Source: Ranitomeya imitator (Eukaryota). From it: a stretch of 64,000 nt of DNA. The translations under genes and the position numbers were made by a program. Positions 11,588 through 40,690 of the stretch are shown one piece after another (the first letter of the stretch is position 1; the number at the start of each line of letters is the position of its first letter). The DNA lies in assembly GCF_032444005.1 (NCBI RefSeq), contig NC_091286.1, forward strand, positions 11,532,001 through 11,596,000, in the 5' to 3' direction. The notes under the pieces are model-generated. The model ran no database searches. It was not told where the DNA came from and was given only the letters and a program-made list of their open reading frames with translations.

Positions 11588-13794
11588 CACCAGCAGAATA
11601 GTGAGCGCAGCTCTGGAGTATAATACAGTAACGTATGTACAGAGTGACTGCACCAGCAGAATAGTGAGTGCAGCTCTGGAGTATAATACAGGAGGTAACT
11701 CAGGATCAGTAATGTAATGTATGTACACAGTGACTGTACCAGCAGAATAGTGAGTGCAGCTCTGGAGTATAATACAGGAGGTAACTCAGGATCAGTAATG
11801 TAATGTATGTACACAGTGACTGCACCAGCAGAATAGTGAGTGCAGCTCTGGGTATAATACAGGATGTAACTCAGGATCAGTAATGTAATGTATGTACACA
11901 GTGACTGCACCAGCAGAATAGTGAGTGCAGCTCTGGAGTATAATACAGGAGGTAACTCAGGATCAGTAATGTAATGTATGTACACAGTGACTGCACCAGC
12001 AGAATAGTGAGTGCAGCTCTGGAGTATAATACAGGAGGTAACTCAGGATCAGTAATGTAATGTATGTACACAGTGACTGCACCAGCAGAATAGTGAGTGC
12101 AGCTCTGGGGTATAATACAGGATGTAACTCAGGATCAGTAATGTAATGTATGTACACAGTGACTGCACCAGCAGAATAGTGAGTGCAGCACTGGAGTATA
12201 ATACAGGATGTAACTCAGGATCAGTAATGTAATGTATGTACACAGTGACTGCACCAGCAGAATAGTGAGTGCAGCTCTGGAGTATAATACAGGATGTAAC
12301 TCAGGATCAGTAATGTAATGTATGTACACAGTGACGGCACCAGCAGAATAGTGAGTGCAGCTCTGGAGTATAATACAGGAGGTAACTCAGGATCAGTAAT
12401 GTAATGTATGTACACAGTGACTGCACCAGCAGAATAGTGAGTGCAGCTCTGGAGTATAATACAGGATGTAACTCAGGATCAGTAATGTTATGTATGTACA
12501 CAGTGACTGCACCAGCAGAATAGTGAGTGCAGCTCTGGAGTATAATACAGGATGTAACTCAGGATCAGTAATGTAATGTATGTACACAGTGACGGCACCA
12601 GCAGAATAGTGAGTGCAGCTCTGGAGTATAATACAGGAGGTAACTCAGGATCAGTAATGTAATGTATGTACACAGTGACGGCACCAGCAGAATAGTGAGT
12701 GCAGCTCTGGAGTATAATACAGGATGTAACTCAGGATCAGTAATGTTATGTATGTACACAGTGACTGCACCAGCAGAATAGTGAGTGCAGCTCTGGGGTA
12801 TAATACAGGAGGTAACCCAGGATCAGTAATGTAATGTATGTACACAGTGACTGCACCAGCAGAATAGTGAGTGCAGCTCTTGAGTACAATACAGTAACGT
12901 AATGTATGTACAGAGTGACTGCACCAGCAGAATAGTGAGTGCAGCTCTGGAGTATAATACAGTAACATAATGTATGTACACAGTGACTGCACCAGCAGAA
13001 TAGTGACTGCACCAGCAGAATAGTGAGTGCAGCTCTAGAGTATAATACAGGATGTAACTCATGTAACTCAGGATCAGTAATGTATGTACACAGTGACTGC
13101 ACCAGCAGAATAGTGAGCGCAGCTCTGGAGTATAATACAGGATGTAACTCATGTAACTCAGGATCAGTAATGCTATGTATGTACAGAGTGACTGCACCAG
13201 CAGAATAGTGAGCGCAGCTCTGGAGTATAATACAGTAACGTAATGTATGTACACAGTGACTGCACCAGCAGAATAGTGACTGCACCAGCAGAATAGTGAG
13301 TGCAGCTCTGGAGTATAATACAGGATGTAACTCAGGATCAGTAATGTATGTACACAGTGACTGCACCAGCAGAATAGTGAGTGCAGCTCTGGGGTATAAT
13401 ACAGGAGGTAACTCAGGATCAGTAATGTAATGTATGTACACAGTGACTGCACCAGCAGAATAGTTAGTGCAGCTCTGGGGTACAATACAGGATGTAACTC
13501 AGGATCAGTAATGTAATGTGTGTACACAGTGACTGTACCAGCAGAATAGTGAGTGCAGCTCTGTAGGATAATAAAGGAAGCAACTCAGGATCAGTAATGT
13601 AATGTATGCACACAGTGACTGCACCAACAGAATAGTGAGTGCAGCTCTGGAGTATAATACAGGAGGTAACTCAGGATCAGTAATGTAATGTATGTACACA
13701 GTGACTGCACCAGCAGAATAGTGAGTGCAGCTCTGGAGTATAATACAGGATGTAACTCAGGATCAGTAATGTAATGTATGTACACAGTGACTGC
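11588..13794. repeat. 86-bp satellite, block 1
   Basis: Unit GATCAGTAATGTAATGTATGTACACAGTGACTGCACCAGCAGAATAGTGAGTGCAGCTCTGGAGTATAATACAGGATGTAACTCAG; ORF offsets of 86. Confidence 0.97.
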
Positions 13795-19520: not shown

Positions 19521-21852
19521 GTAACATAGTAACATAGTAACATAGTTAGTAAGGCCGAAAAAAGACATTTGTCCATCCAGTTCAGCCTATATTCCATTAT
19601 AATAAATACCAGATCTACGTCCTTCTACAGAACCTAATAATTGTATGATACAATATTGTTCTGCTCCAGGAAGACATCCAGGCCTCTCTTGAACCCCTCG
19701 ACTGAGTTCGCCATCACCACCTCCTCAGGCAAGCAATTCCAGATTCTCACTGCCCTAACAGTAAAGAATCCTCTTCTATGTTGGTGGAAAAACCTTCTCT
19801 CCTCCAGACGCAAAGAATGCCCCCTTGTGCCCGTCACCTTCCTTGGTATAAACAGATCCTCAGCGAGATATTTGTATTGTCCCCTTATATACTTATACAT
19901 GGTTATTAGATCGCCCCTCAGTCGTCTTTTTTCTAGACTAAATAATCCTAATTTCGCTAATCTATCTGGGTATTGTAGTTCTCCCATCCCCTTTATTAAT
20001 TTTGTTGCCCTCCTTTGTACTCTCTCTAGTTCCATTATATCCTTCCTGAGCACCGGTGCCCAAAACTGGACACAGTACTCCATGTGCGGTCTAACTAGGG
20101 ATTTGTACAGAGGCAGTATAATGCTCTCATCATGTGTATCCAGACCTCTTTTAATGCACCCCATGATCCTGTTTGCCTTGGCAGCTGCTGCCTGGCACTG
20201 GCTGCTCCAGGTAAGTTTATCATTAACTAGGATCCCCAAGTCCTTCTCCCTGTCAGATTTACCCAGTGGTTTCCCGTTCAGTGTGTAATGGTGATATTGA
20301 TTCCTTCTTCCCATGTGTATAACCTTACATTTATCATTGTTAAACCTCATCTGCCACCTTTCAGCCCAAGTTTCCAACTTATCCAGATCCATCTGTAGCA
20401 GAATACTATCTTCTCTTGTATTAACTGCTTTACATAGTTTTGTATCATCTGCAAATATCGATATTTTACTGTGTAAACCTTCTACCAGATCATTAATGAA
20501 TATGTTGAAGAGAACAGGTCCCAATACTGACCCCTGCGGTACCACTGGTCACAGCGACCCAGTTAGAGACTATACCATTTATAACCACCCTCTGCTTTCT
20601 ATCACTAAGCCAGTTACTAACCCATTTACACACATTTTCCCCCAGACCAAGCATTCTCATTTTGTGTACCAACCTCTTGTGCGGCACGGTATCAAACGCT
20701 TTGGAAAAATCGAGATATACCACATCCAATGACTCACCGTGGTCCAGCCTGTAGCTTACCTCTTCATAAAAACTGATTAGATTGGTTTGACAGGAGCGAT
20801 TTCTCATAAACCCATGCTGATATGGAGTTAAACAGTTATTCTCATTGAGATAATCCAGAATAACATCCCTCAGAAACCCTTCAAATATTTTACCAACAAT
20901 AGAGGTTAGACTTACTGGCCTATAATTTCCAGGTTCACTTTTAGAGCCCTTTTTGAATATTGGCACCACATTTGCTATGCGCCAGTCCTGCGGAACAGAC
21001 CCTGTCGCTATAGAGTCCCTAAAAATAAGAAATAATGGTTTATCTATTACATTACTTAGTTCTCTTAGTACTCGTGGGTGTATGCCATCCGGACCCGGAG
21101 ATTTATCTATTTTAATCTTATTTAGCCGGTTTCGCACCTCTTCTTGGGTTAGATTGGTGACCCTTAATATAGGGTTTTCATTGTTTCTTGGGATTTCACC
21201 TAGCATTTCATTTTCCACCGTGAATACCGTGGAGAAGAAGGTGTTTAATATGTTAGCTTTTTCCTCGTCATCTACAACCATTCTTTCCTCACTATTTTTT
21301 AAGGGGCCTACATTTTCAGTTTTTATTCTTTTACTATTGATATAGTTGAAGAACAGTTTGGGATTAGTTTTACTCTCCTTAGCAATGTGCTTCTCTGTTT
21401 CCTTTTTGGTAGCTTTAATTAGTTTTTTAGATAAAGTATTTTTCTCCCTATAGTTTTTTAGAGCTTCAATGGTGCCATCCTGCTTAAGTAGTGCAAATGC
21501 TTTCTTTTTACTGTTAATTGCCTGTCTTACTTCTTTGTTTAGCCACATTGGGTTTTTCCTATTTCTAGTCCTTTTATTCCCACAAGGTATAAACCGCTTA
21601 CACTGCCTATTTAGGATGTTCTTAAACATTTCCCATTTATTATCTGTATTCTCATTTCTGAGGATATTGTCCCAGTCTACCAGATTAAGGGCATCTCTAA
21701 GCTGTTCAAACTTTGCCTTCCAAAAGTTCAATGTTTTTGTGACTCCCTGACAAGTCCCCCTAGTGAAAGACAGGTGAAACTGTACAATATTGTGGTCGCT
21801 ATTTCCTAGATGCCCGACCACCTGCAGATTTGTTATTCTGTCAGGTCTATTA
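19521..21852 (-). mobile_element. 5'-truncated CR1 LINE (end of the endonuclease domain, RT, 3' UTR, (CTATGTTA)n tail)
   Basis: PGNYRPVSLTS, YLDFSKAFDTVPH, PQGSVLGP, FADDTKL motifs; 8-bp repeat tail at 19521-19546; 2-bp deletion frameshift near 20542. Confidence 0.96.
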
Positions 21853-23867
21853 TACAGAGTATAATACAGGATGTAACTCAGGATCAGTAATGTAATATAT
21901 GTATACAGTGACTGCACCAGCAGAATAGTGAGTGCAGCTCTGGGGTATAATACAGGATGTCACTCAGGATCAGTAATGTAATGTATGTACACAGTGACTG
22001 CACCAGCAGAATAGTGAGTGCAGCTCTGGGGTATAATACAGGATGTCACTCAGGATCAGTAATGTATTGTATGTACACAGTGACTGCACCAGCAGAATAG
22101 TGAGTGCAGCTCTGGGGTATAATTCAAGATGTCACTTAGGATCAGTAATGTAATGTATGTACACAGTGACTGCACCAGCAGAATAGTGAGTGCAGCTCTG
22201 GAGTATAATACACGATGTAACTAAGGATCAGTAATGTAATGTATGTACACAGTGACTGCACCAGCAGAATAGTGAGTGCAGCTCTGGGGTATAATACAGG
22301 ATGTCACTCAGGATCAGTAATGTATGTACACAGTGACTGCACCAGCAGAATAGTGAGTGCAGCTCTGCGGTATAATACAGGAGGTAACTCAGGATCAGTA
22401 ATGTAATGAATGTACACAGTGACTGCACTAGCAGAATAGTGAGTGCAGCTCTGGAGTATAATACAGGAGGTAACTCAGGATCAGTAATGTAATGTATGTA
22501 CACAGTGACTGCACCAGCAGAATAGTGAGTGCAGCTCTGGGGTATAATACAGGAGGTAACTCAGGATCAGTAATGTAATGTATGTACACAGTGACTGCAC
22601 TAGCAGAATAGTGAGTGCAGCTCTGGGGTATAATGCAGGAGGTAACTCAGGATCAGTAATGTAATGTATGTACACAGTGACTGCACCCGCAGAATAGTGA
22701 GTGCAGCTCTGGGGTATAATGCAGGAGGTAACTCAGGATCAGTAATGTAATGTATGTACACAGTGACTGCACCCGCAGAATAGTGAGTGCAGCTCTAGAG
22801 TATAATACAGGAGGTAACTCAGGATCAGTAATGTAATGTATGTACACAGTGACTGCACTAGCAGAATAGTGAGTGCAGCTCTGGGGTATAATGCAGGAGG
22901 TAACTCAGGATCAGTAATGTAATGTATGTACACAGTGACTGCACCCGCAGAATAGTGAGTGCAGCTCTGGAGTATAATACAGGATGTAACTCAGGATCAG
23001 TAATGTATGTACACAGTGACTGCACCAGCAGAATAGTGAGTGCAGCTCTGGAGTATAATACAGAAGGTAACTCAGGATCAGTAATGTAATGTACGTACAT
23101 TGTGACTGCACCAGCAGAATAGTGAGTGCAGCTCTGGGGTACAATACAGGATGTAACTCAGGATCAGTAATGTAATGTATGTACACAGTGACTGCACCAG
23201 CAGAATAGTGAGTGCAGCTCTGGGGTATAATACAGGAGGTAACTCAGGATCAGTAATGTAATGTATGTACACAGTGACTGCACTAGCAGAATAGTGAGTG
23301 CAGCTCTGGGGTATAATGCAGGAGGTAACTCAGGATCAGTAATGTAATGTATGTACACAGTGACTGCTCCCGCAGAATAGTGAGTGCAGCTCTGGAGTAT
23401 AATACAGGATGTAACTCAGGATCAGTAATGTATGTACACAGTGACTGCACCAGCAGAATAGTGAGTGCAGCTCTGGAGTATAATACAGAAGGTAACTCAG
23501 GATCAGTAATGTAATGTACGTACATTGTGACTGCACCAGCAGAATAGTGAGTGCAGCTCTGGGGTACAATACAGGATGTAACTCAGGATCAGTAATGTAA
23601 TGTATGTACACAGTGACTGCACCAGCAGAATAGTGAGTGCAGCCCTGGAGTATAATACAGGATGTAACTCAGGATCAGTAATGTAATGTATGTACACAGT
23701 GACTGCACCAGGAGAATAGTGAGTGCAGCTCTGGGGTACAATACAGGATGTAACTCAGGATCAGTAATGTAATGTATGTACACAGTGACTGCACCAGCAG
23801 AATAGTGAGTGCAGCTCTGGAGTATAATACAGGATGTAACTCAGGATCAGTAATGTAATGTATGTAC
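21853..23867. repeat. 86-bp satellite, block 2 (between the two CR1 copies)
   Basis: Same unit as block 1; contains a 425-bp higher-order duplication. Confidence 0.96.
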
Positions 23868-23897: not shown

Positions 23898-26800
23898 GAT
23901 TCGGATTCCTGGACCACGGTGTGAATTACTTGTACGATGGACTCCTCGCCAGAGACGTACTACACCTCAACAAACCTGGGAAACACACATTCGCCAGAAG
24001 ACTCGCTACACTCATCAGGAGGGCGTTAAACTAGAAGAAGAGGGGACGGGAAGAAAAACATTAGACTTGAACAAAGAAGACCCAGGAAAACAAACTCAGA
24101 TGGGAGGTAAGAACATTTCTAAAACAATCCACAGCGAGGAGATTGGAACAAAACAAAATCCTCTAAACTGCATGCTCGCAAACGCCAGAAGCCTGACAAA
24201 CAAGATGGAAGAACTAGAAGCAGAAATATCTACAGGTAACTTTGACATAGTGGGAATAACCGAGACATGGTTAGATGAAAGCTATGACTGGGCAGTTAAC
24301 TTACAGGGTTACAGTCTGTTTAGAAAGGATCGTAAAAATCGGAGAGGAGGAGGGGTTTGTCTCTATGTAAAGTCTTGTCTAAAGTCCACTTTAAGGGAGG
24401 ATATTAGCGAAGGAAATGAGGATGTCGAGTCCATATGGGTCGAAATTCATGGAGGGAAAAATGGTAACAAAATTCTCATTGGGGTCTGTTACAAACCCCC
24501 AAATATAACAGAAACCATGGAAAGTCTACTTCTAAAGCAGATAGATGAAGCTGCAACCCATAATGAGGTCCTGGTTATGGGGGACTTTAACTACCCGGAT
24601 ATTAACTGGGAAACAGAAACCTGTGAAACCCATAAAGGCAACAGGTTTCTGCTAATAACCAAGAAAAATTATCTTTCACAATTGGTGCAGAATCCAACCA
24701 GAGGAGCAGCACTTTTAGACCTAATACTATCTAATAGACCTGACAGAATAACAAATCTGCAGGTGGTTGGGCATTTAGGAAATAGCGACCACAATATTGT
24801 GCAGTTTCACCTGTCTTTCACTAGGGGGACTTGTCAGGGAGTCACAAAAACACTGAACTTTAGGAAGGCAAAGTTTGAACAGCTTAGAGATGCCCTTAAT
24901 CTGGTAGACTGGGACAATATCCTCAGAAATAAGAATACAGATAATAAATGGGAAATGTTTAAGAACATCCTAAATAGGCAGTGTAAGCGGTTTATACCTT
25001 GTGGGAATAAAAGGACTAGAAATTGGGTTTTTCCTATGTGGCTAAACAAAGAAGTAAGACAGGCAATTAACAGTAAAAAGAAAGCATTTGCACTACTAAA
25101 GCAGGATGGCACCATTGAAGCTCTAAAAAACTATAGGGAGAAAAATACTTTATCTAAAAAACTAATTAAAGCTGCCAAAAAGGAAACAGAGAAGCACATT
25201 GCTAAGGAGAGTAAAACTAATCCCAAACTGTTCTTCAACTATATCAATAGTAAAAGAATAAAAACTGAAAATGTAGGCCCCTTAAAAAATAGTGAGGAAA
25301 GAATGGTTGTAGATGACGAGGAAAAAGCTAACATATTAAACACCTTCTTCTCCACGGTATTCACGGTGGAAAATGAAATGCTAGGTGAAATCCCAAGAAA
25401 CAATGAAAACCCTATATTAAGGGTCACCAATCTAACCCAAGAAGAGGTGCGAAATCGGCTAAATAAGATTAAAATAGATAAATCTCCGGGTCCGGATGGC
25501 ATACACCCACGAGTACTAAGAGAACTAAGTAATGTAATAGATAAACCATTATTTCTTATTTTTAGGGACTCTATAGCGACAGGGTCTGTTCCGCAGGACT
25601 GGCGCATAGCAAATGTGGTGCCAATATTCAAAAAGGGCTCTAAAAGTGAACCTGGAAATTATAGGCCAGTAAGTCTAACCTCAATTGTTGGTAAAATATT
25701 TGAAGGGTTTCTGAGGGATGTTATTCTGGATTATCTCAATGAGAATAACTGTTTAACTCCATATCAGCATGGGTTTATGAGAAATCGCTCCTGTCAAACC
25801 AATCTAATCAGTTTTTATGAAGAGGTAAGCTATAGGCTGGACCACGGTGAGTCATTGGACGTGGTATATCTCGATTTTTCCAAAGCGTTTGATACCGTGC
25901 CGCACAAGAGGTTGGTACACAAAATGAGAATGCTTGGTCTGGGGGAAAATGTGTGTAAATGGGTTAGTAACTGGCTTAGTGATAGAAAGCAGAGGGTGGT
26001 TATAAATGGTATAGTCTCTAACTGGGTCGCTGTGACCAGTGGGGACCGCAGGGGTCAGTATTGGGACCTGTTCTCTTCAACATATTCATTAATGATCTGG
26101 TAGAAGGTTTACACAGTAAAATATCGATATTTGCAGATGATACAAAACTATGTAAAGCAGTTAATACAAGAGAAGATAGTATTCTGCTACAGATGGATCT
26201 GGATAAGTTGGAAACTTGGGCTGAAAGGTGGCAGATGAGGTTTAACAATGATAAATGTAAGGTTATACACATGGGAAGAAGGAATCAATGTCACCATTAC
26301 ACACTGAACGGGAAACCACTGGGTAAATCTGACAGGGAGAAGGACTTGGGGATCCTAGTTAATGATAAACTTACCTGGAGCAGCCAGTGCCAGGCAGCAG
26401 CTGCCAAGGCAAACAGGATCATGGGGTGCATTAAAAGAGGTCTGGATACACATGATGAGAGCATTATACTGCCTCTGTACAAATCCCTAGTTAGACCGCA
26501 CATGGAGTACTGTGTCCAGTTTTGGGCACCGGTGCTCAGGAAGGATATAATGGAACTAGAGAGAGTACAAAGGAGGGCAACAAAATTAATAAAGGGGATG
26601 GGAGAACTACAATACCCAGATAGATTAGCGAAATTAGGATTATTTAGTCTAGAAAAAAGACGACTGAGGGGCGATCTAATAACCATGTATAAGTATATAA
26701 GGGGACAATACAAATATCTCGCTGAGGATCTGTTAATACCAAGGAAGGTGACGGGCACAAGGGGGCATTCTTTGCGTCTGGAGGAGAGAAGGTTTTTCCA

Positions 26801-27057
26801 CCAACATAGAAGAGGATTCTTTACTGTTAGGGCAGTGAGAATCTGGAATTGCTTGCCTGAGGAGGTGGTGATGGCGAACTCAGTCGAGGGGTTCAAGAGA
26901 GGCCTGGATGTCTTCCTGGAGCAGAACAATATTGTATCATACAATTATTAGGTTCTGTAGAAGGACGTAGATCTGGGTATTTATTATGATGGAATATAGG
27001 CTGAACTGGATGGACAAATGTCTTTTTTCGGCCTTACTAACTATGTTACTATGTTAC
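23898..27057 (+). mobile_element. CR1 LINE, 5'-truncated within ORF1
   Basis: ORF1 tail (FGFLDHG...RDVLHLN...RALN*, esterase-like DxxH) ending at 24034; full EN+RT ORF2; 3' stem-loop AGGCTGAA/TTCGGCCT; (CTATGTTA)n tail. Confidence 0.96.
24100..26951 (+). pseudogene. CR1 ORF2 (APE endonuclease + RT) with a 1-bp deletion frameshift at 26044/26045
   Basis: NARSL, GITETW, GDFN, SDHN endonuclease motifs; RT split between ORFs 23896-26103 and 26061-26951; GGGGTACC has become GGGGACC. Confidence 0.9.
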
Positions 27058-27938
27058 ACAGTGACTGCACCAGCAGAATAGTGAGTGCAGCTCTGGGGTA
27101 CAATACAGGATGTAACTCAGGATCAGTAATGTAATGTATGTACACAGTGACTGCACCAGCAGAATAGTGAGTGCAGCTCTGGGGTATAATACAGGATGTC
27201 ACTCAGGATCAGTAATGTATGTACACAGTGACTGCACCAGCAGAATAGTGAGTGCAGCTCTGGGGTATAATACAGGAGGTAACTCAGGATCAGTAATGTA
27301 TGTACACAGTGACTGCACTAGCAGAATAGTGAGTGCAGCTCTGGAGTATAATACAGGAGGTAACTCAGGATCAGTAATGTAATGTATGTACACAGTGACT
27401 GCACCAGCAGAATAGTGAGTGCAGCTCTGGAGTATAATACAGGATGTAACTCAGGATCAGTAATGTATGTACACAGTGACTGCACCAGCAGAATAGTGAG
27501 TGCAGCTCTGGGGTATAATACAGGAGGTAACTCAGGATCAGTAATGTAATGTATGTACACAGTCACTGCACTAGCAGAATAGTGAGTGCAGCTCTGGGGT
27601 ATAATGCAGGAGGTAACTCAGGATCAGTAATGTAATGTATGTACACAGTGACTGCACCCGCAGAATAGTGAGTGCAGCTCTGGAGTATAATACAGGATGT
27701 AACTCAGGATCAGTAATGTAATGTATGTACACAGTGACTGCACCAGCAGAATAGTGAGTGCAGCTCTGGAGTATAATACAGAAGGTAACTCAGGATCAGT
27801 AATGTAATGTACGTACATTGTGACTGCACCAGCAGAATAGTGAGTGCAGCTCTGGGGTACAATACAGGATGTAACTCAGGATCAGTAATGTAATGTATGT
27901 ACACAGTGACTGCACCAGCAGAATAGTGAGTGCAGCTC
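27058..27938. repeat. 86-bp satellite, block 3
   Basis: Same unit; resumes in register directly after the CR1 tail. Confidence 0.96.
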
Positions 27939-29265: not shown

Positions 29266-29835
29266 TAGTGACAGCTGCTGACAATCAGAGGGGGCACTGA
29301 CGGGCAGATCAGTGACAGCTGCTGACAATCAGAGGGGGCACTGACGGGCAGATCAGTGACAGCTGCTGACAATCAGAGGGGGCACTGACGGGCAGATCAG
29401 TGACAGCTGCTGACAATCAGAGGGGGCACTGACGGGCAGATCAGTGACAGCTGCTGACAATCAGAGGGGGCACTGACGGGCAGATCAGTAACAGCTGCTG
29501 ACAATCAGAGGGGGCACTGACGGGCAGATCAGTGACAGCTGCTGACAATCAGAGAGGTCACTGACGGGCAGATCAGTGACAGCTGCTGACAATCAGAGGG
29601 GGCACTGACTGGCAGATCAGTGACAGCTGCTGACAATCAGAGGGGGCACTGACGGGCAGATCAGTGACAGCTGCTGACAATCAGAGAGGTCACTGACGGG
29701 CAGATCAGTGACAGCTGCTGACAATCAGAGGGGGCACTGACTGGCAGATCAGTGACAGCTGCTGACAATCAGAGGGGGCACTGACGGGCAGATCAGTAAC
29801 AGCTGCTGACAATCAGAGGGGGCACTGACGGGCAG
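29266..29835. repeat. 44-bp minisatellite, ~13 copies
   Basis: Unit GTGACAGCTGCTGACAATCAGAGGGGGCACTGACGGGCAGATCA; begins ~10 nt past the exon 4 donor. Confidence 0.95.
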
Positions 29836-29845
29836 AGGGACGTAC

Positions 29846-30065
29846 CGGCTGTCCCGATCCCAGAGGAGGAGGCGGATGTGGTTGATGATGGACGGCTGCC
29901 CCAGCTTCACTTCCAGACCAGAGCGACAGTCGTCCTCGATCGGATGCCGAGAAAAGCCGTGATCTAAGTCGTAGTTCTGAGTGTCGCCGTCCAGCAGGGC
30001 CGACTTCAGCTCCCCCTTCACCACCTGCGCTCCGTACTTCATGGTGGCAATATTCTCCTCTGGGA
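29846..30065 (-). CDS. BTBD9: BTBD9 coding exon 4 (220 nt): (I)PEENIATMKYGAQVVKGELK...HIRLLLWDRDSR
   Basis: Recognised BTBD9 sequence; AG/GT boundaries; phases compatible. Confidence 0.97.
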
Positions 30066-30504
30066 CTGGGGGAGAGGACAAGAAAGGCATTAGAAAAGAC
30101 ACAGAATACACGACAAGTCAGGGGGCTGGTGGAGAATGTGCTGTCCTGTTATACCCAAAGGGGGGCTGCCTGCATATGTGGACCACCATTCTCTGCTCCG
30201 GTCACACCTAGAGCTGCGCTCACACCATGGACGTTATCCTTACTGCACTCGTCATTGGTTCAGGTCATATGCTGCAGCGCATCTTGGTTTAAGAAAAAGC
30301 TGAATTATAAATGCAGCTCTAGATATGTGGCTGGAGTATTACATGTGTGAACGCAGCTCTGAGGCTTTGCAGCTTATTAATTGTAAGCCTGATACAGGGT
30401 ATGAGTGGAGCATGAGATTATAGATGCAGCTCTGGATGTGACCGGAGGATACAAATGCTGTCTGAGACTGACACTGAAGAGATGAAAGGAGAAAAAAAAA
30501 TTGT

Positions 30505-30690
30505 GACTGCAGCTCTGGCTGTGGCCGGAGCATTAGAGCATGTCTGCCGCTCTGGCTGTGGCCGGAGCATTAGCGCATATCTGCAGCTCTGGATGTGGCC
30601 GGAGCATTAGAGCATGTCTGCAGCCCTGGCTGTGGCCGGAGCATTAGCGCATATCTGCAGCTCTGGATGTGGCCGGAGCATTAGAGCAGC
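30505..30690. repeat. 37-bp minisatellite, ~5 copies
   Basis: Unit TGCAGCTCTGGCTGTGGCCGGAGCATTAGAGCATGTC. Confidence 0.85.
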
Positions 30691-30757
30691 TCGTGTCCTA
30701 GGTCTGTGTGGCGCTTTACACCGTGATGACGCTCAGCCTCCTAGCAGCAACGCGTAC

Positions 30758-31022
30758 TCAGCATCCCGCGGTAGTTCAGGTCCATGTCGCGGCTCTCCGA
30801 TCGCACTTTTATGGCGTCCAGGATGGAGTCGGGGGTGAGCAGCGCAGACGGCCGGACCACGTTCAGCAGCTCCGTGAGGCTCATAAGTGGAAGGCGCACG
30901 GCGGCCATGATCTCCGAGTGATTCTCCTTCGTGTTGTGTCTACACCAGCGCATCAGAGACTGGAAAACGTCCTTCTCCGGCGCAGCGAACGAGTCTCTCC
31001 GCACAATATCCAGGAGCGCGGC
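30758..31022 (-). CDS. BTBD9: BTBD9 coding exon 3 (265 nt; BACK region): AALLDIVRRDSFAAPEKDVF...DMDLNYRGML
   Basis: Recognised BTBD9 sequence; TTCACAG|GCC acceptor, A|GTACGC donor. Confidence 0.97.
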
Positions 31023-34000
31023 CTGTGAACAGAGTGGGCAGAGTTACTACAGGGGGCACACAAGGGGCTCACACCATACCACCCCTGTGAACAGAGTGGG
31101 CAGAGTTACTACAGGGGGCACACAAGGGGCTCACATCATACCACCCCCGTGTACAGAGCGGGCAGAGTGACTACAGGGGGCACACAAGGGGCTCACATCA
31201 TACCATCCCTGTGAACAGAGTGGGCAGAGTGACTACAGGGGGCACACAAGGGGCTCACACCATACCACCCCTGTGTACAGAGCGGGCAGAGTGACTACAG
31301 GGGGCACACAAGGGGCTCACATCATACCACCCCTGTGTACAGAGCGGGTAGAGTGACTACAGGGGGCACACAAGGGGCTCACATCATACCACCCCTGTGT
31401 ACAGAGCGGGCAGAGTGACTACAGGGGGCACACAAGGGGCTAACATCATACCACCCCTGTGTACAGAGCGGGCAGAGTGACTACAGGGGGCACACAAGGG
31501 GCTCACATCATACCACCCCTGTGTACAGAGCGGGCAGAGTGACTACAGGGGGCACACAAGGGGCTCACATCAAACCACCCCTGTGTACAGAGTGGGCAGA
31601 GTGACTACAGGTGGCACACAAGGGGCTAACATCATACCACCCCTGTGTACAGAGCGGGCAGAGTGACTACAGGGGGCACACAAGGGGCTCACATCATACC
31701 ACCCCTGTGTACAGAGCGGGCAGAGTGACTACAGGGGGCACACAAGGGGCTCACATCATACCACCCCTGTGTACAGAGCGGGCAGAGTGACTACAGGGGG
31801 CACACAAGGGGCTAACATCATACCACCCCTGTGTACAAAGCGGGCAGAGTGACTACAGGGGGCACACAAGGGGCTCACATCATACCATCCCTGTGTACAG
31901 AGCGGGTAGAGTGACTACAGGGGGCACACAAGGAGCTCACACCATACCACCCCTGTGTACAGAGCGGGCAGAGTGACTACAGGGGGCACACAAGGGGCTC
32001 ACATCATACCACCCCTGTGTACAGAGCGGGCAGAGTGACTACAGGGGGCACACAAGGGGCTCACATCATACCACCCCTGTGTACAGAGCGGGCAGAGTGA
32101 CTACAGGGGGCACACAAGGGGCTCACATCAAACCACCCCTGTGTACAGAGCGGGCAGAGTGACTACAGGTGGCACACAAGGGGCTAACATCATACCACCC
32201 CTGTGTACAGAGCGGGCAGAGTGACTACAGGGGGCACACAAGGGGCTCACATCAAACCACCCCTGTGTACAGAGCGGGCAGAGTGACTACAGGGGGCACA
32301 CAAGGGGCTCACATCATACCACCCCTGTGTACAGAGCGGGCAGAGTGACTACAGGGGGCACACAAGGGGCTAACATCATACCACCCCTGTGTACAAAGCG
32401 GGCAGAGTGACTACAGGGGGCACACAAGGGGCTCACATCATACCACCCCTGTGTACAGAGCGGACAGAGTGACTACAGGGGCACACAAGGGGCTCACATC
32501 ATACCATCCCTGTGTACAGAGCGGGTAGAGTGACTACAGGGGGCACACAAGGGGCTCACATCATACCACCCCTGTGTACAGAGTGGGCAGAGTGACTACA
32601 GGGGGCACACAAGGGGCTCACATCATACCACCCCTGTGTACAGAGCGGGTAGAGTGACTACAGGGGGCACACAAGGGGCTCACATCATACCACCCCTGTG
32701 TACAGAGCGGACAGAGTGACTACAGGGGGCACACAAGGGGCTCACATCATACCATCCCTGTGAACAGAGTGGGCAGAGTGACTACAGGGGGCACACAAGG
32801 GGCTCACATCATACCACACCTGTGTACAGAGCGGGCAGAGTGACTACAGGGGGCACACAAGGGGCTAACATCATACCACCCCTGTGTACAGAGCGGGCAG
32901 AGTGACTACAGGGGGCACACAAGGGGCTCTCATCATACCACCCCTGTGTACAGAGCGGACAGAGTGACTACAGGGGGCACACAAGGGGCTCACATCATAC
33001 CACCCCTGTGTACAGAGCGGGCAGTGACTACAGGGGGCACACAAGGGGCTCACATCATACCACCCCTGTGTACAGAGCGGGCAGTGACTACAGGGGGCAC
33101 ACAAGGGGCTCACATCATACCACCCCTGTGTACAGAGTGGGCAGAGTGACTACAGGGGGCACACAAGGGGCTCACATCATACCACCCCTGTGTACAGAGT
33201 GGGCAGAGTGACTACAGGGGGCACACAAGGGGCTCACATCATACCACCCCTGTGTACAGAGCGGGCAGAGTGACTACAGGGGGCACACAAGGAACTCACA
33301 TCATACCACCCCTGTGTACAGAGCGGGCAGAGTGACTACAGGGGGCACACAAGGGGCTCACATCATACCATCCCTGTGAACAGAGTGGGCAGAGTGACTA
33401 CAGGGGGCACACAAGGGGCTCACACCATACCACCCCTGTGTACAGAGCGGGCAGAGTGACTACAGGGGGCACACAAGGGGCTCACATCATACCACCCCTG
33501 TGTACAGAGCGGGTAGAGTGACTACAGGGGGCACACAAGGGGCTCACACCATACCACCCCTGTGTACAGAGCGGGCAGAGTGACTACAGGGGGCACACAA
33601 GGGGCTCACATCAAACCACCCCTGTGTACAGAGCGGGCAGAGTGACTACAGGGGGCACACAAGGGGCTCACATCATACCACCCCTGTGTACAGAGCGGGC
33701 AGAGTGACTACAGGGGGCACACAAGGGGCTCACACCATACCACCCCTGTGTACAGAGCGGGCAGAGTGACTACAGGGGGCACACAAGGGGCTCACATCAA
33801 ACCACCCCTGTGTACAGAGCGGGCAGAGTGACTACAGGGGGCACACAAGGGGCTCACATCATACCACCCCTGTGTACAGAGCGGGCAGAGTGACTACAGG
33901 GGGCACACAAGGGGCTCACATCATACCACACCTGTGTACAGAGCGGGCAGAGTCATTACAGGGGGCACACAAGGGGCTCACATCATACCACCCCTGTGTA

Positions 34001-35080
34001 CAGAGCGGGCAGAGTGACTACAGGGGCACACAAGGGGCTCACATCATACCACCCCTGTGTACAGAGCGGGTAGAGTGACTACAGGGGGCACACAAGGGGC
34101 TCACATCATACCACCCCTGTGTACAGAGCGGGCAGAGTGACTACAGGGGGCACACAAGGAACTCACATCATACCACCCCTGTGTATAGAGCGGGCAGACT
34201 GACTACAGGGGGCACACAAGGGGCTCACATCATACCACCCCTGTGTACAGAGCGGGCAGAGTGACTACAGGGGGCACACAAGGGGCTCACATCAAACCAC
34301 CCCTGTGTACAGAGCGGGCAGAGTGACTACAGGGGGCACACAAGGGGCTCACATCATACCACCCCTGTGTGCAGAGCGGGCAGAGTGACTACAGGGGGAA
34401 CGCAAGGGGCTCACATCATACCACCCCTGTGTACAGAGCGGACAGAGTGACTACAGGGGGCACACAAGGGGCTCACATCATACCACCCCTGTGTACAGAG
34501 CGGGCAGAGTGACTACAGGGGGCACACAAGGGGCTCACATCATACCACCCCTGTGTACAGAGCGGGCAGAGTGACTACAGGGGGCACACATCATACCACC
34601 CCTGTGTACAGAGCGGACAAAGTGACTACAGGGGGCACACAAGGGGCTCACATCATACCACCCCTGTGTACAGAGCGGGCAGAGTGACTACAGGGGGCAC
34701 ACAAGGGGCTCACATCATACCCCACCTGTGTACAGAGCGGACAGAGTGACTACAGGGGGCACACAAGGGGCTCACATCATACCACCCCTGTGTACAGAGC
34801 GGGCAGAGTGACTACAGGGGGCACACAAGGGGCTCACATCATACCACCCCTGTGTACAGAGCGGGCAGAGTGACTACAGGGGGCACACAAGGGGCTCACA
34901 TCATACCACCCCTGTGTACAGAGCGGGCAGAGTCATTACAGGGGGCACACAAGGGGCTCACATCATACCACCCCTGTGTACAGAGCGGGCAGAGTCACTA
35001 CAGGGGGCACACAAGGGGCTCACATCATACCACCCCTGTGTACAGAGCGGGCAGAGTCACTACAGGGGGCACACAAGGGG
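31023..35080. repeat. 62-bp minisatellite, ~65 copies, whose unit contains the exon 3 splice acceptor
   Basis: Minus-strand unit ...CCCCCTGTAGTCACTCTGCCCGCTCTGTACACAG|G; fills nearly the whole intron. Confidence 0.97.
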
Positions 35081-35128
35081 AGCCCCGACAGTCAGGTGGA
35101 CGCCCTGCATACAATCTAGACTCAGCAC

Positions 35129-35492
35129 CTTGGACAGGGTCAGGAAGCCGTCACTGGCGAGGACGTCCTGCGCGTTCCGGTCCATGAACACACAGCAGGT
35201 GGAGCAGAGCTTGGACAGCGAGTAGAGGCTGGCCACGTCGTAGATCATGCACACGTTCTGGATCTTCAGGATGGTGCACAGGTACTCGGACGTGGAGTCC
35301 TCCAGCTCCGGGAAGCCATACTTGTGCGCCAGGCTCAGCAAGTCCAGCAGCACCTCCTCCCGCTCGTCCCGCAGGCTGGCCCGGCCCGTGTACATGTACT
35401 TCATCAGCATGGAGAAGGCCTCGGGGCCGGTGTCCTGCAGGGTGATCTCCGCCTCCGGGCGAGACTCCCTCATCCCTCCGTATAACAGCGCC
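35129..35492 (-). CDS. BTBD9: BTBD9 coding exon 2 (364 nt; BTB/BACK): ALLYGGMRESRPEAEITL...SDGFLTLSK
   Basis: Recognised BTBD9 sequence; TACGCAG|G acceptor, AAG|GTGCTG donor; in frame with exons 1 and 3. Confidence 0.96.
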
Positions 35493-38400
35493 CTGCGTAG
35501 AGCGACATACAGGGAGACACATGAGTATATGGACAGCGGGCGGCCCCCGAATATATACACCCCCCACACTGCGCCCTCATCCCTCCGTATAACAGCGCCC
35601 TGCGTAGAGCGACACACAGGGAGACACATGAGTATATGGACAGCGGGCGGCCCCCGAATATATACACCCCCCACACTGCGCCCTCATCCCTCCGTATAAC
35701 AGCGCCCTGCGTAGAGCGACATACAGGGAGACACATGAGTATATGGACAGCGGGCGGCCCCCGAATATATACACCCCCACACTGCGCCCTCATCCCTCCG
35801 TATAACAGCGCCCTGCGTAGTGTGGCATACAGGGAGACACATGAGTATATGGACAGAGGGCGGCCCCGAATATATACACCCCCCACACTCCGCCCTCATC
35901 CCTCCGTATAACAGCGCCCTGCGTAGTGCGGCATACAGGGAGACACATGAGTACATGGACAGCGAGCGGCCCCCGAATATATACACCCCACAATACACCG
36001 CCCTACACCCCGCCCTCATCCCTCCGTATAACAGCGCCCTGTGTGGAGCGACATACAGGGAGACACATGAGTATATGGACAGCGGGCGGCCCCCAAATAT
36101 ATACACCCCCCACACTCCGCCATCATCCCTCCGTATAACAGCGCCCTGCGTAGAGCGACATACAGGGAGACACATGAGTATATGGACAGCGGGCGGCCCC
36201 CAAATATATACACCCCACAATACACCGCCCTCATCCCTCCGTATAACAGCGCACTGCGTAGAGCGACATACAGGGAGACACATGAGTATATGGACAGCGA
36301 GCGGCCCCCAAATATATACACCCCCCACACTCCGCCATCATCCCTCCGTATAACAGCGCCCTGCGTAGAGCGACATACAGGGAGACACATGAGTATATGG
36401 ACAGCGAGTGGCCCCCAAATATATACACCCCGCAATACACCGCCCTCATCCCTCCGTATAACAGCGCCCTGTGTGGAGCGACATACAGGGAGACACATGA
36501 GTATATGGACAGCGGGCGGCCCCCAAATATATACACCCCCCACACTCCGCCATCATCCCTCCGTATAACAGCGCCCTGCGTAGAGCGACATACAGGGAGA
36601 CACATGAGTATATGGACAGCGGGCGGCCCCCAAATATATACACCCCACAATACACCGCCCTCATCCCTCCGTATAACAGCGCACTGCGTAGAGCGACATA
36701 CAGGGAGACACATGAGTATATGGACAGCGAGCGGCCCCCAAATATATACACCCCCCACACTCCGCCATCATCCCTCCGTATAACAGCGCCCTGCGTAGAG
36801 CGACATACAGGGAGACACATGAGTATATGGACAGCGAGTGGCCCCCAAATATATACACCCCGCAATACACCGCCCTCATCCCTCCGTATAACAGCGCCCT
36901 GCGTAGAGCGACATACAGGGAGACACATGAGTATATGGACAGCGGGCGGCCCCCGAATATATACACCCCCCACACTGCGCCCTCATCCCTCCGTATAACA
37001 GCGCCCTGCGTAGAGCGACATACAGGGAGATACATGAGTATATGGACAGCGAGCGGCCCCCAAATATATACACCCCCCACACTCCGCCATCATCCCTCCG
37101 TATAACAGCGCCCTGCGTAGAGCGACATACAGGGAGACACATGAGTATATGGACAGCGAGTGGCCCCCAAATATATACACCCCGCAATACACCCCCCACA
37201 CTCCGCCCTCATCCCTCCGTATAACAGCGCCCTGTGTAGAGTGACATACAGGGAGACACATGAGTATATGGACAGCGAGCGGCCCCCAAATATATACACC
37301 CCCCACACTCCGCCCTCATCCCTCCATATAACAGCGCCCTGCGTAGAGCGACATACAGGGAGACACATGAGTATATGGACAGCGGGCGGCCCCCGAATAT
37401 ATACACCCCACAATACACCGCCCTCATCCCTCCGTATAACAGCGCCCTGTGTAGAGCGACATACAGGGAGACACATGAGTATATGGACAGCGAGCGGCCC
37501 CCAAATATATACACCCCGCAATACACCGCCCTCACCCCTCCATATAACAGCGCCCTGTGTAGAGCGACATACAGGGAGACACATGAGTATATGGACAGCG
37601 GGCGGCCCCCGAATATATACACCCCCCACACTCCGCCCTCATCCCTCCGTATAACAGCGCCCTGCGTAGAGCGGCATACAGGGAGACACATGAGTATATG
37701 GACAGCGAGCGGCCCCCAAATATATACACCCCGCAATACACCGCCCTACACCCCGCCCTCATCCCTCCGTATAACAGCGCCCTGCGTAGAGCGACATACA
37801 GGGAGACACATGAGTATATGGACAGCGAGCGGCCCCCAAATATATACACCCCCCACACTGCGCCCTCATCCCTCCATATAACAGCGCCCTGCGTAGAGCG
37901 ACATACAGGGAGACACATGAGTATATGGACAGTGGGCGGCCCCCAAATATATACACCCCCCACACTGCGCCCTCATCCCTCCATATAACAGCGCCCTGCG
38001 TAGAGCGACATACAGGGAGACACATGAGTATATGGACAGTGGGCGGCCCCCAAATATATACACCCCCCACACTGCGCCCTCATCCTTCCGTATAACAGCG
38101 CCCTGCGTAGAGCGACATACAGGGAGATACATGAGTATATGGACAGCGAGCGGCCCCCAAATATATACACCCCCCACACTGCGCCCTCATCCCTCCGTAT
38201 AACAGCGCCCTGCGTAGAGCGACATACAGGGAGATACATGAGTATATGGACAGCGAGCGGCCCCCAAATATATACACCCCCCACACTCCGCCATCATCCC
38301 TCCGTATAACAGCGCCCTGCGTAGAGCGACATACAGGGAGACACATGAGTATATGGACAGCGAGTGGCCCCCAAATATATACACCCCGCAATACACCCCC

Positions 38401-40690
38401 CACACTCCGCCCTCATCCCTCCGTATAACAGCGCCCTGTGTAGAGTGACATACAGGGAGACACATGAGTATATGGACAGCGAGCGGCCCCCAAATATATA
38501 CACCCCCCACACTCCGCCCTCATCCCTCCATATAACAGCGCCCTGCGTAGAGCGACATACAGGGAGACACATGAGTATATGGACAGCGGGCGGCCCCCGA
38601 ATATATACACCCCACAATACACCGCCCTCATCCCTCCGTATAACAGCGCCCTGTGTAGAGCGACATACAGGGAGACACATGAGTATATGGACAGCGAGCG
38701 GCCCCCAAATATATACACCCCGCAATACACCGCCCTCACCCCTCCATATAACAGCGCCCTGTGTAGAGCGACATACAGGGAGACACATGAGTATATGGAC
38801 AGCGGGCGGCCCCCGAATATATACACCCCCCACACTCCGCCCTCATCCCTCCGTATAACAGCGCCCTGCGTAGAGCGGCATACAGGGAGACACATGAGTA
38901 TATGGACAGCGAGCGGCCCCCAAATATATACACCCCGCAATACACCGCCCTACACCCCGCCCTCATCCCTCCGTATAACAGCGCCCTGCGTAGAGCGACA
39001 TACAGGGAGACACATGAGTATATGGACAGCGAGCGGCCCCCAAATATATACACCCCCCACACTGCGCCCTCATCCCTCCATATAACAGCGCCCTGCGTAG
39101 AGCGACATACAGGGAGACACATGAGTATATGGACAGTGGGCGGCCCCCAAATATATACACCCCCCACACTGCGCCCTCATCCCTCCATATAACAGCGCCC
39201 TGCGTAGAGCGACATACAGGGAGACACATGAGTATATGGACAGTGGGCGGCCCCCAAATATATACACCCCCCACACTGCGCCCTCATCCTTCCGTATAAC
39301 AGCGCCCTGCGTAGAGCGACATACAGGGAGACACATGAGTATATGGACAGCGGGCGGCCCCCGAATATATACACCCCGCAATACACCGCCCTACACCCCT
39401 CCATATAACAGCGCCCTGCGTAGAGCGACATACAGGGAGACACATGAGTATATGGACAGCGAGCGGCCCCCAAATATATACACCCCCCACACTGCGCCCT
39501 CATCCCTCCATATAACAGCGCCCTGTGTAGAGCGACATACAGGGAGACACATGAGTATATGGACAGCGGGCGGCCCCCGAATATATACACCCCCCACACT
39601 GCGCCCTCATCCCTCCATATAACAGCGCCCTGTGTAGAGCGACATACAGGGAGACACATGAGTATATGGACAGCGGGCGGCCCCCGAATATATACACCCC
39701 GCAATACACCCCCCACACTCCGCCCTCATCCCTCCGTATAACAGCGCCCTGTGTAGAGCGACATACAGGGAGACACATGAGTATATGGACAGCGAGCGGC
39801 CCCCAAATATATACACCCCCCACACTCCGCCCTCATCCCTCCGTATAACAGCGCCCTGCGTAGAGTGACATACAGGGAGACACATGAGTATATGGACAGC
39901 GAGCGGCCCCCAAATATATACACCCCCCACACTCCGCCCTCATCCCTCCATATAACAGCGCCCTGCGTAGAGCGACACACAGGGAGACACATGAGTATAT
40001 GGACAGCGAGCGGCCCCCAAATATATACACCCCGCAATACACCGCCATACACCCCTCCATATAACAGCGCCCTGTGTAGAGCGACATACAGGGAGACACA
40101 TGAGTATATGGACAGCGGGCGGCCCCCGAATATATACACCCCCCACACTCATCTCTCCGTATAACAGCGCCCTGCGTAGAGCGACATACAGGGAGACACA
40201 TGAGTACATGGACAGCGGGCGGCCCCCGAATATATACACCCCCCACACTCCGCCCTCATCCCTCCGTATAACAGCGCCCTGCGTAGAGCGACATACAGGG
40301 AGACACATGAGTATATGGACAGCGGGCGGCCCCCAAATATATACACCCCCCACATTGCGCCCTCATCCCTCCGTATAACAGCGCCCTGCGTAGAGCGACA
40401 TACAGGGAGACACATGAGTATATGGACAGCGAGCGGCCCCCGAATATATACACCCCCCACACTCATCCCTCCGTATAACAGCGCCCTGCGTAGAGCGACA
40501 TACAGGGAGACACATGAGTATATGGACAGCGGGCGGCCCCCGAATATATACACCCCCCACACTGCGCCCTCATCCCTCCATATAACAGCGCCCTGCGTAG
40601 AGCGACATACAGGGAGACACATGAGTACATGGACAGCGGGCGGCCCCCAAATATATACACCCCGCATACACCCTACACGCACCGCCCTAC
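35467..40690. repeat. 107-bp minisatellite, ~49 copies, whose unit includes the exon 2 acceptor plus 26 coding nt
   Basis: Unit starts at 35467 and recurs at 35574; the first unit overlaps the exon at 35467-35492. Confidence 0.97.

What the first reader, a model, noticed from the sequence alone, without database searches (positions are those of the whole stretch)
31023..35080. A second, independent acceptor-amplified array in the next BTBD9 intron
Seen: the 62-bp unit ends exactly at the exon 3 acceptor. The true site is CTCTGCCCACTCTGTTCACAG|GCC and the units read CTCTGCCCGCTCTGTACACAG|GGG. The array occupies ~4.06 kb of a 4.1-kb intron. Using the copy one unit upstream frameshifts to a TGA inside exon 3; copies further upstream stop at GGT ATG ATG TGA. 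The proximal units carry the TTCACAG variant identical to the functional site. Inference: two consecutive introns with unrelated units, both anchored on 3' splice sites, suggest a recurrent process that duplicates acceptor regions rather than chance.
Basis: partly seen in the sequence, partly recalled or inferred. Interest (0 to 1): 0.75.

Follow-up and report, generated by a model that had tools for sequence, protein, structure and literature searches.

The report
Acceptor-derived minisatellite filling a frog BTBD9 intron
In a poison frog's BTBD9 gene the last 62 bases of one intron, splice signal included, have been copied head to tail about 65 times, yet transcripts still use only the copy touching the exon; this is a striking but already known kind of repeat in a very repeat-prone region.

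Summary
A 62-bp minisatellite (65 units plus a 45-nt partial unit, about 2% from consensus) occupies 4,058 of the 4,106 nt of the BTBD9 intron on the minus strand. It ends at the acceptor AG (31024-31023) of coding exon 3. Sixty-four upstream copies keep an AG, and using any of them gives an early stop.

- **Splicing.** Spliced transcript contigs from four runs, one from a related species, join exon 2 to exon 3 only at the exon-adjacent copy.
- **Origin.** The last unit is homologous to the last ~60 nt of the same intron in another frog (L001) that has no array. The acceptor region was therefore amplified, not captured from an older satellite. The functional copy keeps two ancestral bases that the array consensus has lost.
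- **The proposed process.** An acceptor-specific duplicating process is not shown. Half the window is tandem arrays. In the same gene a 44-bp array starts 9 nt after a donor and two arrays lie mid-intron.

This scan already noted similar arrays in this genome on other DNA: at donors (EMC1, NECAP1, STT3A, FLVCR1, MFN2, POLQ) and at acceptors (MRTO4, BTBD9 intron 1). Closest known kinds are amphioxus "mirages" and the human F7, IFI6 and CBS boundary minisatellites. Verdict: a new member of a known kind, most likely a tolerated by-product.

The parts
31023..35080 (-). 62-bp minisatellite: 65 units plus a 45-nt distal partial unit. Each unit carries a branch-point-like TAGTCAC, a pyrimidine-rich tract and CACAG.
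   Evidence: TRF; unit-by-unit listings
31023..31084 (-). Last unit, the functional 3' splice site: TAGTAAC branch-like motif 21 nt before TTCACAG|G, with AG at 31024-31023. It differs from the array consensus at unit positions 11G, 40A, 50A and 57T.
   Evidence: Loose ends at 31024 in four runs carry the 3' end of exon 2.
31085..31146 (-). Nearest decoy unit. Its branch-like motif, pyrimidine tract and AG are identical to the functional unit (one difference, at unit position 11). Its use adds 62 nt and leads to a TGA in exon 3.
31147..31208 (-). The only unit without an AG (ends CACGG).
35036..35080 (-). Distal 45-nt partial unit (CCCCTTG...CACAG) joined to unique intron sequence. It carries TAGTGAC, the state also seen in L001.
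35081..35128 (-). The only unique part of the intron: the donor GTGCTGAGT plus 39 nt.
35129..35492 (-). BTBD9 coding exon 2 (end of the BTB domain, start of the BACK domain).
   Evidence: Translation; Pfam BTB 3.8e-12 and BACK 5.7e-07
30758..31022 (-). BTBD9 coding exon 3 (BACK domain).
   Evidence: Translation; Pfam BACK 7e-12; spliced contigs with joint 30065|30758 and loose end at 31024
29844..30065 (-). BTBD9 coding exon 4.
   Evidence: Spliced contigs in X1, X2 and X6
29267..29836 (-). Context: a 44-bp array that begins 9 nt after the GT of the exon 4 donor.
35467..40663 (-). Context: the 107-bp array of the previous intron, whose unit holds the exon 2 acceptor plus the first 26 nt of the exon (35467-35492).

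Best explanation
This is a young, lineage-specific intronic minisatellite. It arose when the last ~62 nt of BTBD9 intron 2 (branch site, pyrimidine tract and AG) were duplicated in tandem and then expanded to about 65 copies by slippage and unequal crossing-over. The surrounding region is exceptionally minisatellite-dense and probably subtelomeric. The array has no function of its own. Splicing still uses the copy that touches the exon, most likely because only that copy is followed by exon 3 and its donor (exon definition). That copy also has a slightly better branch-point match (TAGTAAC against TAGTCAC) and one more pyrimidine at -6. The other 64 AG-bearing copies are silent or rarely used decoys, and their products would be out of frame and removed by NMD.

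Shown here: the array and its limits, the junction used, the descent of the unit from the ancestral intron end, and the lack of the array in two other frogs. Inferred: the expansion mechanism, exon definition as the selector, and NMD of any decoy products.
For: - **Array anatomy and limits:**
- **Junction used:** four transcript-like contig sets (X1, X2, X6 of organism A from three studies; X9 of a related organism B) run through exon 4|exon 3 (joint 30065|30758). They leave the window at 31024 with letters that are the 3' end of exon 2. No loose end falls at any decoy AG in the ten proximal units.
- **Descent from the ancestral intron end:** the last unit aligns to the last 70 nt of the orthologous intron in L001 with score 25, against shuffles of 6.3 sd 3.3 (0 of 500). 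In L001 the best windows on either strand are those over the acceptor, and none of 1,998 windows from other loci reaches that score (max 22).
- **Array absent in relatives:** L001 and L002 have unique sequence there, and L003 shows only two short (<50 nt) T-rich repeats.
- **Functional copy is the conserved one:** the last unit keeps the L001 state at unit positions 11 (G) and 57 (T), where 60 of 65 units carry derived bases.
- **Growth by multi-unit exchange:** variant blocks such as [11G 50A 57T][3A] recur at units 27-28 and 62-63, with a close variant at 37-38.
- **Regional context:** 51% of the window is tandem arrays. AGGG and ACAG occur at 46 and 49 per kb in this array, against 8 and 12 per kb outside arrays. 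This is the signature reported for X. tropicalis extended subtelomeres, where unequal crossing-over is proposed to drive expansion (PMC10794172).
- **Precedent for normal splicing:** boundary minisatellites with normal splicing from the exon-adjacent copy are known in human F7, LMNB2 and PDGFA (PMC1557585) and in amphioxus 'mirages', acceptor side included (PMC3087553).
Against: - Only assembled contigs could be laid, and only over ten proximal units, so low-level or NMD-degraded decoy use is not excluded.
- The nearest decoy is identical to the real site over branch site, tract and AG. The sequence differences therefore cannot explain the choice, and exon definition is inferred, not tested.
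- The array ends within 1 nt of the exon edge, which a randomly placed founding duplication would do only rarely.
- The origin of the first ~16 nt of the unit is not resolved. MAFFT places it against the donor-side flank, while by eye it fits L001.
- Homology to L002 is weak (score 13, reached by 24 of 500 shuffles).
- The chromosomal position was not established. The only hint is a TTAGGG-like array at 60153-60449.
Confidence: 0.75

Rival explanations
1. One reading: a recurrent mutational process preferentially duplicates 3' splice-site regions (or splice-site consensus sequences in general), so arrays nucleate at acceptors more often than chance. One possible reason is that the acceptor consensus contains motifs (ACAG, AGGG) that favour minisatellite birth in frog subtelomeres.
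For: - Two consecutive introns carry arrays on their acceptors.
- This array ends within 1 nt of the exon edge.
- The two units share a 24-column block just upstream of their AGs.
- ACAG and AGGG are enriched in this array and in X. tropicalis subtelomeric tandem repeats (PMC10794172).
- Earlier notes list further boundary arrays in this genome (unchecked).
Against: - In the same gene one array abuts a donor and two lie mid-intron.
- The earlier notes hold more donor than acceptor cases, so the pattern is not acceptor-specific.
- Acceptor-like motifs occur once per unit in two arrays outside the coding introns (46-bp and 30-bp arrays).
- First-stage readers pick out arrays near exons, so the list is biased.
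- No enrichment test was possible.
Confidence: 0.12
2. Reverse causality: a pyrimidine-rich satellite was there first, and after loss of the original intron end one of its units was recruited as the new acceptor of exon 3.
For: - Almost all unique intron sequence is gone: 48 nt are left, while L001 has at least 433 nt and L003 about 1.6 kb.
- Other arrays in the window carry acceptor-like motifs by composition alone.
Against: - The last unit is homologous to the acceptor-proximal ~60 nt of the L001 intron and to nothing else in that contig.
- The exon-adjacent unit carries ancestral states that the consensus has lost.
- The unit was not seen elsewhere in the window.
Confidence: 0.06
3. The array is a selected regulatory device. 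Its decoy acceptors would divert part of the pre-mRNA to NMD or delay splicing, and so tune the BTBD9 level.
For: - 64 of 65 upstream copies keep an intact AG.
- All decoy products are out of frame.
- A 92-nt contig from inside the array is present in one transcript-like run.
Against: - Intact AGs are expected from youth and homogenisation (2% divergence), so they need no selection.
- No decoy junction was seen in four runs.
- The array is absent in L001 and L002, so it is not conserved.
- Many unrelated genes of this genome carry similar arrays according to earlier notes.
Confidence: 0.05
4. The array is an assembly artefact, an over-expanded or misplaced repeat.
For: The array itself is supported here only by the assembly and by one 92-nt contig.
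Against: - The units carry an ordered, non-periodic pattern of variants and five length variants.
- Both flanks join correctly to exons confirmed by spliced contigs.
- Neighbouring introns hold other arrays of the same style.
Confidence: 0.02

Closest known systems
Amphioxus 'mirage' minisatellites (Adh3, globins BflGb6/BflGb9, TnC, PGBD5; PMC3087553, PMC3902484)
   Same: Both are tandem repeats seated on an exon-intron boundary, acceptor side included (BflGb6: 3' end of the intron plus 5' part of exon 2). They give many copies of the splice signal, and the normal mRNA is still made.
   Different: Mirage units contain exon sequence. Here the unit stops at the AG and shares only the first exon base. 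The copy number is also far higher (about 65, against 3-6 in BflGb6), and the host is a vertebrate.
Human boundary minisatellites: F7 IVS7 37-bp VNTR, IFI6, CBS intron 13, LMNB2, PDGFA (PMC1557585)
   Same: The array is born from a splice-site region, and identical pseudo-sites remain silent or nearly so. The exon-adjacent copy is the one used.
   Different: All of those are donor-side arrays whose first unit spans the exon end. This one is acceptor-side. Its true site is the last copy transcribed, so simple 5'-to-3' 'first come' choice would favour the decoys.
Frog extended-subtelomere minisatellites (X. tropicalis and other frogs; PMC10794172)
   Same: The region has very high local array density, is GC-rich and shows AGGG/ACAG/TGGG-enriched units. 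The arrays are lineage-specific and are thought to expand by unequal crossing-over.
   Different: That paper describes the arrays genome-wide and derives some from transposon pieces. It does not describe arrays derived from splice sites. The chromosomal position of this window was not established here.
The 107-bp array in the previous BTBD9 intron
   Same: It lies in the same gene on the same strand, is built on an acceptor, is of similar size, and shares a 24-column block upstream of the AG.
   Different: Its unit includes 26 nt of exon 2, making it a true mirage. Outside the shared block the unit length and the rest of the sequence differ.

Membership tests
Exon-intron boundary ('mirage' / F7-type) minisatellite | Head-to-tail tandem array of a 10-200 bp unit | tested here: met
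   TRF period 62, 65.7 copies, 95% matches; 65 units plus a partial one
Exon-intron boundary ('mirage' / F7-type) minisatellite | The unit spans the boundary, that is, it contains exon sequence as well as intron sequence | tested here: not met
   Homology to the unit stops at 31022, the first exon base. The next 16 exon bases match the unit at 4 of 17 positions by eye. The array abuts the boundary but does not span it.
Exon-intron boundary ('mirage' / F7-type) minisatellite | The authentic splice signal is reiterated in the repeats | tested here: met
   64 upstream copies end in AG behind a branch-like motif and a pyrimidine-rich tract. The nearest copy is identical to the real site.
Exon-intron boundary ('mirage' / F7-type) minisatellite | The unit derives from the gene's own boundary region and not from an imported repeat | tested here: met
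   The last unit is homologous to the intron end of L001 (z 5.6, 0 of 500 shuffles; 0 of 1,998 null windows reach the score)
Exon-intron boundary ('mirage' / F7-type) minisatellite | Normal mRNA is made from the exon-adjacent copy | tested here: met
   Spliced contigs in four runs end at 31024 with exon 2 letters. This is contig-level evidence only.
Exon-intron boundary ('mirage' / F7-type) minisatellite | Copy-number polymorphism between alleles | not testable with these tools
   Read laying refuses stretches with more than 12 copies, and no long reads could be laid
Frog extended-subtelomere tandem repeats (PMC10794172) | Enrichment of TGGG, AGGG and ACAG relative to non-repeat DNA | tested here: met
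   AGGG 46.1 and ACAG 48.8 per kb in the array, against 8.3 and 11.6 per kb outside arrays. TGGG is not enriched in this array, though it is in others.
Frog extended-subtelomere tandem repeats (PMC10794172) | Location in the distal, highly recombining tens of Mb of a chromosome | not testable with these tools
   Only indirect hints: 51% of the window in arrays and a TTAGGG-like array at 60153-60449
Regulated unproductive splicing (poison or decoy splice sites) | Detectable, regulated use of the poison site | tested here: inconclusive
   No decoy junction in contigs of four runs over ten proximal units. Contigs drop rare forms.
Regulated unproductive splicing (poison or decoy splice sites) | Conservation of the poison element across species | tested here: not met
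   No array in L001, L002, L003, L007, L008 or L010 upstream of exon 3
BTBD9 (host gene) | BTB and BACK domains, followed by the conserved downstream exons | tested here: met
Pfam BTB and BACK in exons 2 and 3. 99 exon-3 homologues carry PF07707. Exon order BTB, BTB/BACK, BACK is the same in L003 and L007.

The most novel reading that the evidence does not exclude
In the long subtelomeres of this frog, splice-site consensus sequences, donors and acceptors alike, may act as preferred seeds of minisatellites, for instance because they contain the ACAG/AGGG/TGGG-type motifs enriched in frog subtelomeric arrays. If so, exon-intron boundaries would carry arrays far more often than chance, and many genes would bear a load of tens of decoy splice sites that the spliceosome must ignore. 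BTBD9, with acceptor-seated arrays in two consecutive introns and a donor-abutting one in a third, would be an extreme case.
Probability: 0.12. Interest if true: 0.65.

Novelty: new member of a known kind. Interest (0 to 1): 0.3.

Why it matters
The array is a natural experiment in 3' splice-site choice. There are 64 near-identical acceptors, and the nearest matches the real one in branch site, pyrimidine tract and AG. All are transcribed before the real acceptor, yet the assembled mRNA uses only the last. Donor-side equivalents (F7) were used to argue for scanning and exon-adjacent choice, and an acceptor-side array of this size could be used in the same way. For the genome it adds one more case to a growing list of boundary-seated arrays in the mimic poison frog. 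That list makes a genome-wide enrichment test worth running. On its own it is most likely a tolerated by-product with no function.

Tried and rejected
- **Whole intron in read laying.** As that tool itself advised, I laid 29700-31640, which covers ten proximal units. Exon 2 was therefore outside the stretch, and its junction is read from loose ends, not from a listed joint.
- **Uniform strand bias.** I tested whether all arrays share a G-rich + strand, which would make any array in this gene pyrimidine-rich on the sense strand. It does not hold: GC skews have mixed signs.
- **Decayed mirage.** I considered that the array once extended into exon 3. The unit segment after the AG matches the exon start at about 4 of 17 positions, which is chance level (by eye).
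- **Founding duplication.** I tried to reconstruct it from the distal edge. The first ~16 nt of the unit align equally poorly to the donor-side flank and to L001, so this stays unresolved.
- **Closer relatives.** The word search with the exon 3 frame returned nothing above 90% identity. The array could therefore not be dated within dendrobatids.
- **Splice-site scores.** No MaxEntScan-type scores were computed because the model tables are not on hand. Only pyrimidine counts and branch-motif matches are given.
- **Joined exons.** The joined exon 2 + exon 3 model was not sent to any search. Exons were searched one by one by reference.
Full report
**What is there.**
TRF reports one array at 31022-35080 with period 62, 65.7 copies and 95% matches. 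The gene lies on the minus strand. Reading that strand, exon 2 ends ...TCC AAG and the intron opens GTGCTGAGT at 35128. Exon 3 begins GCC GCG CTC at 31022, behind CTCTGCCCACTCTGTTCACAG. The intron is 4,106 nt (35128-31023), and the array takes 4,058 of them. Only 48 nt next to the donor are unique.

Segmenting from the exon outward gives 65 units and a 45-nt distal partial unit.
- Sixty units are exactly 62 nt. Five are length variants (51, 60, 60, 61 and 61 nt).
- Units differ from the consensus at about 1.2 positions on average.
- Every unit ends in CACAG except the third from the exon, which ends in CACGG. That makes 64 decoy AGs plus the real one.
- Similarity to the unit stops at 31022, the first base of the exon, so the array ends at the exon edge to within one base.

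- The splice-site strings quoted are correct.
- Exon 2 ends on a full codon. Entering at the copy 62 nt upstream reads GWYGVSPLC... into exon 3 out of frame and stops at a TGA at codon 44. Entering further upstream stops after 25 codons at ...ATG ATG TGA.
- The TTCACAG variant is in the last two units and in the unit ending at 31209. It is also in two interior units, ending at 32758 and 33374.

**The host gene.**
Exons 2 and 3 hit Pfam BTB and BACK. The exon 3 frame finds 99 homologous fragments carrying PF07707. Loci from other vertebrates show the same order of BTB, BTB/BACK and BACK exons. The name BTBD9 rests on my own knowledge of the human protein.

**Which acceptor is used.**
I therefore laid 29700-31640, which holds exon 4, intron 3, exon 3 and the ten proximal units.
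- Runs X1, X2 and X6 (organism A, three studies) hold contigs of up to 2.4 kb that skip 30066-30757, with ends reading GT..AG on the minus strand. These contigs are therefore transcripts.
- Those three runs and X9 (related organism B) all leave the window at 31024 with the letters TGGACAGGGTCAGGAAGCC... These are window 35132 onward, the 3' end of exon 2. The two extra matching bases are a chance overlap.
- No loose end lies at a decoy AG.
- One 92-nt contig from inside the array is present in X1. Summed over 65 copies, its depth is what intronic pre-mRNA would give.

Contigs drop rare forms, and NMD would remove decoy products. This result therefore shows the main junction, not the absence of decoy use.

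**Direction of origin.**
Exon 3 fragments from the word search led to genomic contigs of other species. L001 is the closest (exon 3 90% identical in protein) and L002 the next (86%). Both have unique sequence upstream of exon 3 and no array. More distant loci have introns of 1.0-1.6 kb; TRF, run on L003 only, finds just two short T-rich repeats there.
- The last unit aligns to the last 70 nt of the L001 intron with score 25, against 6.3 sd 3.3 for shuffles (0 of 500).
- Of 386 windows on both strands of L001, the best are those over the acceptor. None of 1,998 windows from other loci reaches 25.
- The match to L002 is weak.

The unit therefore descends from the ancestral intron end. The acceptor region was amplified, not captured from an older satellite.

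The last unit scores higher against L001 than the consensus unit does (25 against 17). At unit positions 11 and 57 the last unit has the L001 base, while 60 of 65 units carry a derived one. At position 40 the distal edge units carry the L001 base. Edge units keeping old states is what array homogenisation predicts. The T-to-A change at -6 in the decoys is derived, but one purine in a 19-nt tract is a small effect.

**How the array grew.**
Variant blocks recur. For example, [11G 50A 57T] followed by a 3A unit appears at units 27-28 and 62-63, with a close variant at 37-38. This fits repeated multi-unit unequal exchange. It also shows that the exon-proximal edge has exchanged with the interior.

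**Context.**
- 51% of the window is tandem arrays.
- Within BTBD9, intron 1 holds the 107-bp array that includes the exon 2 acceptor and 26 nt of exon.
- Intron 2 holds this array.
- Intron 3 (692 nt) holds a 37-bp array 69 nt from a donor.
- Intron 4 holds a 44-bp array that starts 9 nt after the donor GT, and a 22-bp array 74 nt from the next acceptor.

Arrays therefore touch donors as well as acceptors, and some touch neither. AGGG and ACAG are four to five times enriched in this array. Bredeson et al. report these tetramers for tandem repeats of the extended subtelomeres of X. tropicalis, and they propose expansion by unequal crossing-over in a highly recombining region of a genome that lacks prdm9 (PMC10794172). 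A TTAGGG-like array lies at 60153-60449. The chromosomal position itself was not established.

**Is an acceptor-specific process needed?**
That cannot be decided from one window.
- In favour: two neighbouring introns with acceptor-seated arrays, an end within 1 nt of the exon, and a 24-column block shared by the two units just upstream of their AGs (0 of 300 shuffles).
- Against: the donor-abutting and mid-intron arrays in the same gene, and acceptor-like motifs once per unit in two arrays outside the coding introns.
- Also against: the earlier notes of this scan list more donor-seated arrays (EMC1, NECAP1, STT3A, FLVCR1, MFN2, POLQ, LRRC36) than acceptor-seated ones (MRTO4, BTBD9 intron 1). 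Those notes are unchecked and biased towards arrays near exons.

A broader version, in which splice-site consensus acts as a seed for minisatellites, stays open and is stated as the novel case.

**How the right copy is chosen (inference).**
The nearest decoy is identical to the real site in branch-like motif, tract and AG, so the intron sequence cannot decide. What differs is downstream: exon 3 with its donor 265 nt away, against GGGTGGTATG and more array. Exon definition is therefore the likely selector. This mirrors the donor-side minisatellites, where the exon-adjacent copy is used (F7, LMNB2, PDGFA; PMC1557585). It also fits the amphioxus mirages that leave splicing normal (PMC3087553, PMC3902484). 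Each unit also carries GTGAGC 12 nt after its AG, but the 50-nt interval to the next AG is too short to expect splicing. I saw no sign that it is used.

**Comparison with known kinds.**
The array works like a boundary minisatellite. It fails one defining feature of a mirage in the strict sense, because the unit holds no exon sequence beyond one base. It is best filed as an acceptor-abutting member of the same broad kind, within the frog subtelomere-type minisatellite landscape.

**Verdict.**
The array is a new member of a known kind and most likely a tolerated by-product.

Noticed in passing
window 29267-29836 and 29844: A 44-bp array (13 copies) begins 9 nt after the GT of the exon 4 donor. 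It is a donor-abutting counterpart of the acceptor arrays in the same gene.
   Followed up: partly
window 31023-35080 against 35467-40663: The 62-bp and 107-bp units share a 24-column block (20 identical) on the gene's strand just upstream of their AGs. The local score is 24, against 13.8 sd 2.2 for shuffles. This could reflect common descent, sequence exchange between neighbouring arrays, or composition.
   Followed up: partly
L001:52-138 (and by eye L002:40-130): In two other frogs the intron upstream of exon 3 holds a decayed fragment resembling part of exon 2 (tblastn 50% over 30 aa in L001). It may be an old partial exon duplication.
   Followed up: no
window 1-64000: 51% of the window lies in tandem arrays of at least 15 different units. 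GGGCAG occurs in the 23-, 27-, 44- and 62-bp arrays on the + strand only.
   Followed up: partly
window 60153-60449: A degenerate TTAGGG-containing array (units of 15, 30 and 63 bp). It may be an interstitial or subtelomeric telomere-like repeat.
   Followed up: no
window 30196-30224 and 30426-30530: Short pieces (18-32 nt) of high-depth transcript contigs from all four runs match intron 3 and then run on unlike. This probably marks a dispersed repeat expressed elsewhere.
   Followed up: no
window 11628-13794, 21859-23867 and 27050-27938: The same 86-bp satellite occurs in three blocks, separated by retroelement-like ORFs (reverse-transcriptase-like frames at 19637-20548 and 26022-26948).
   Followed up: no
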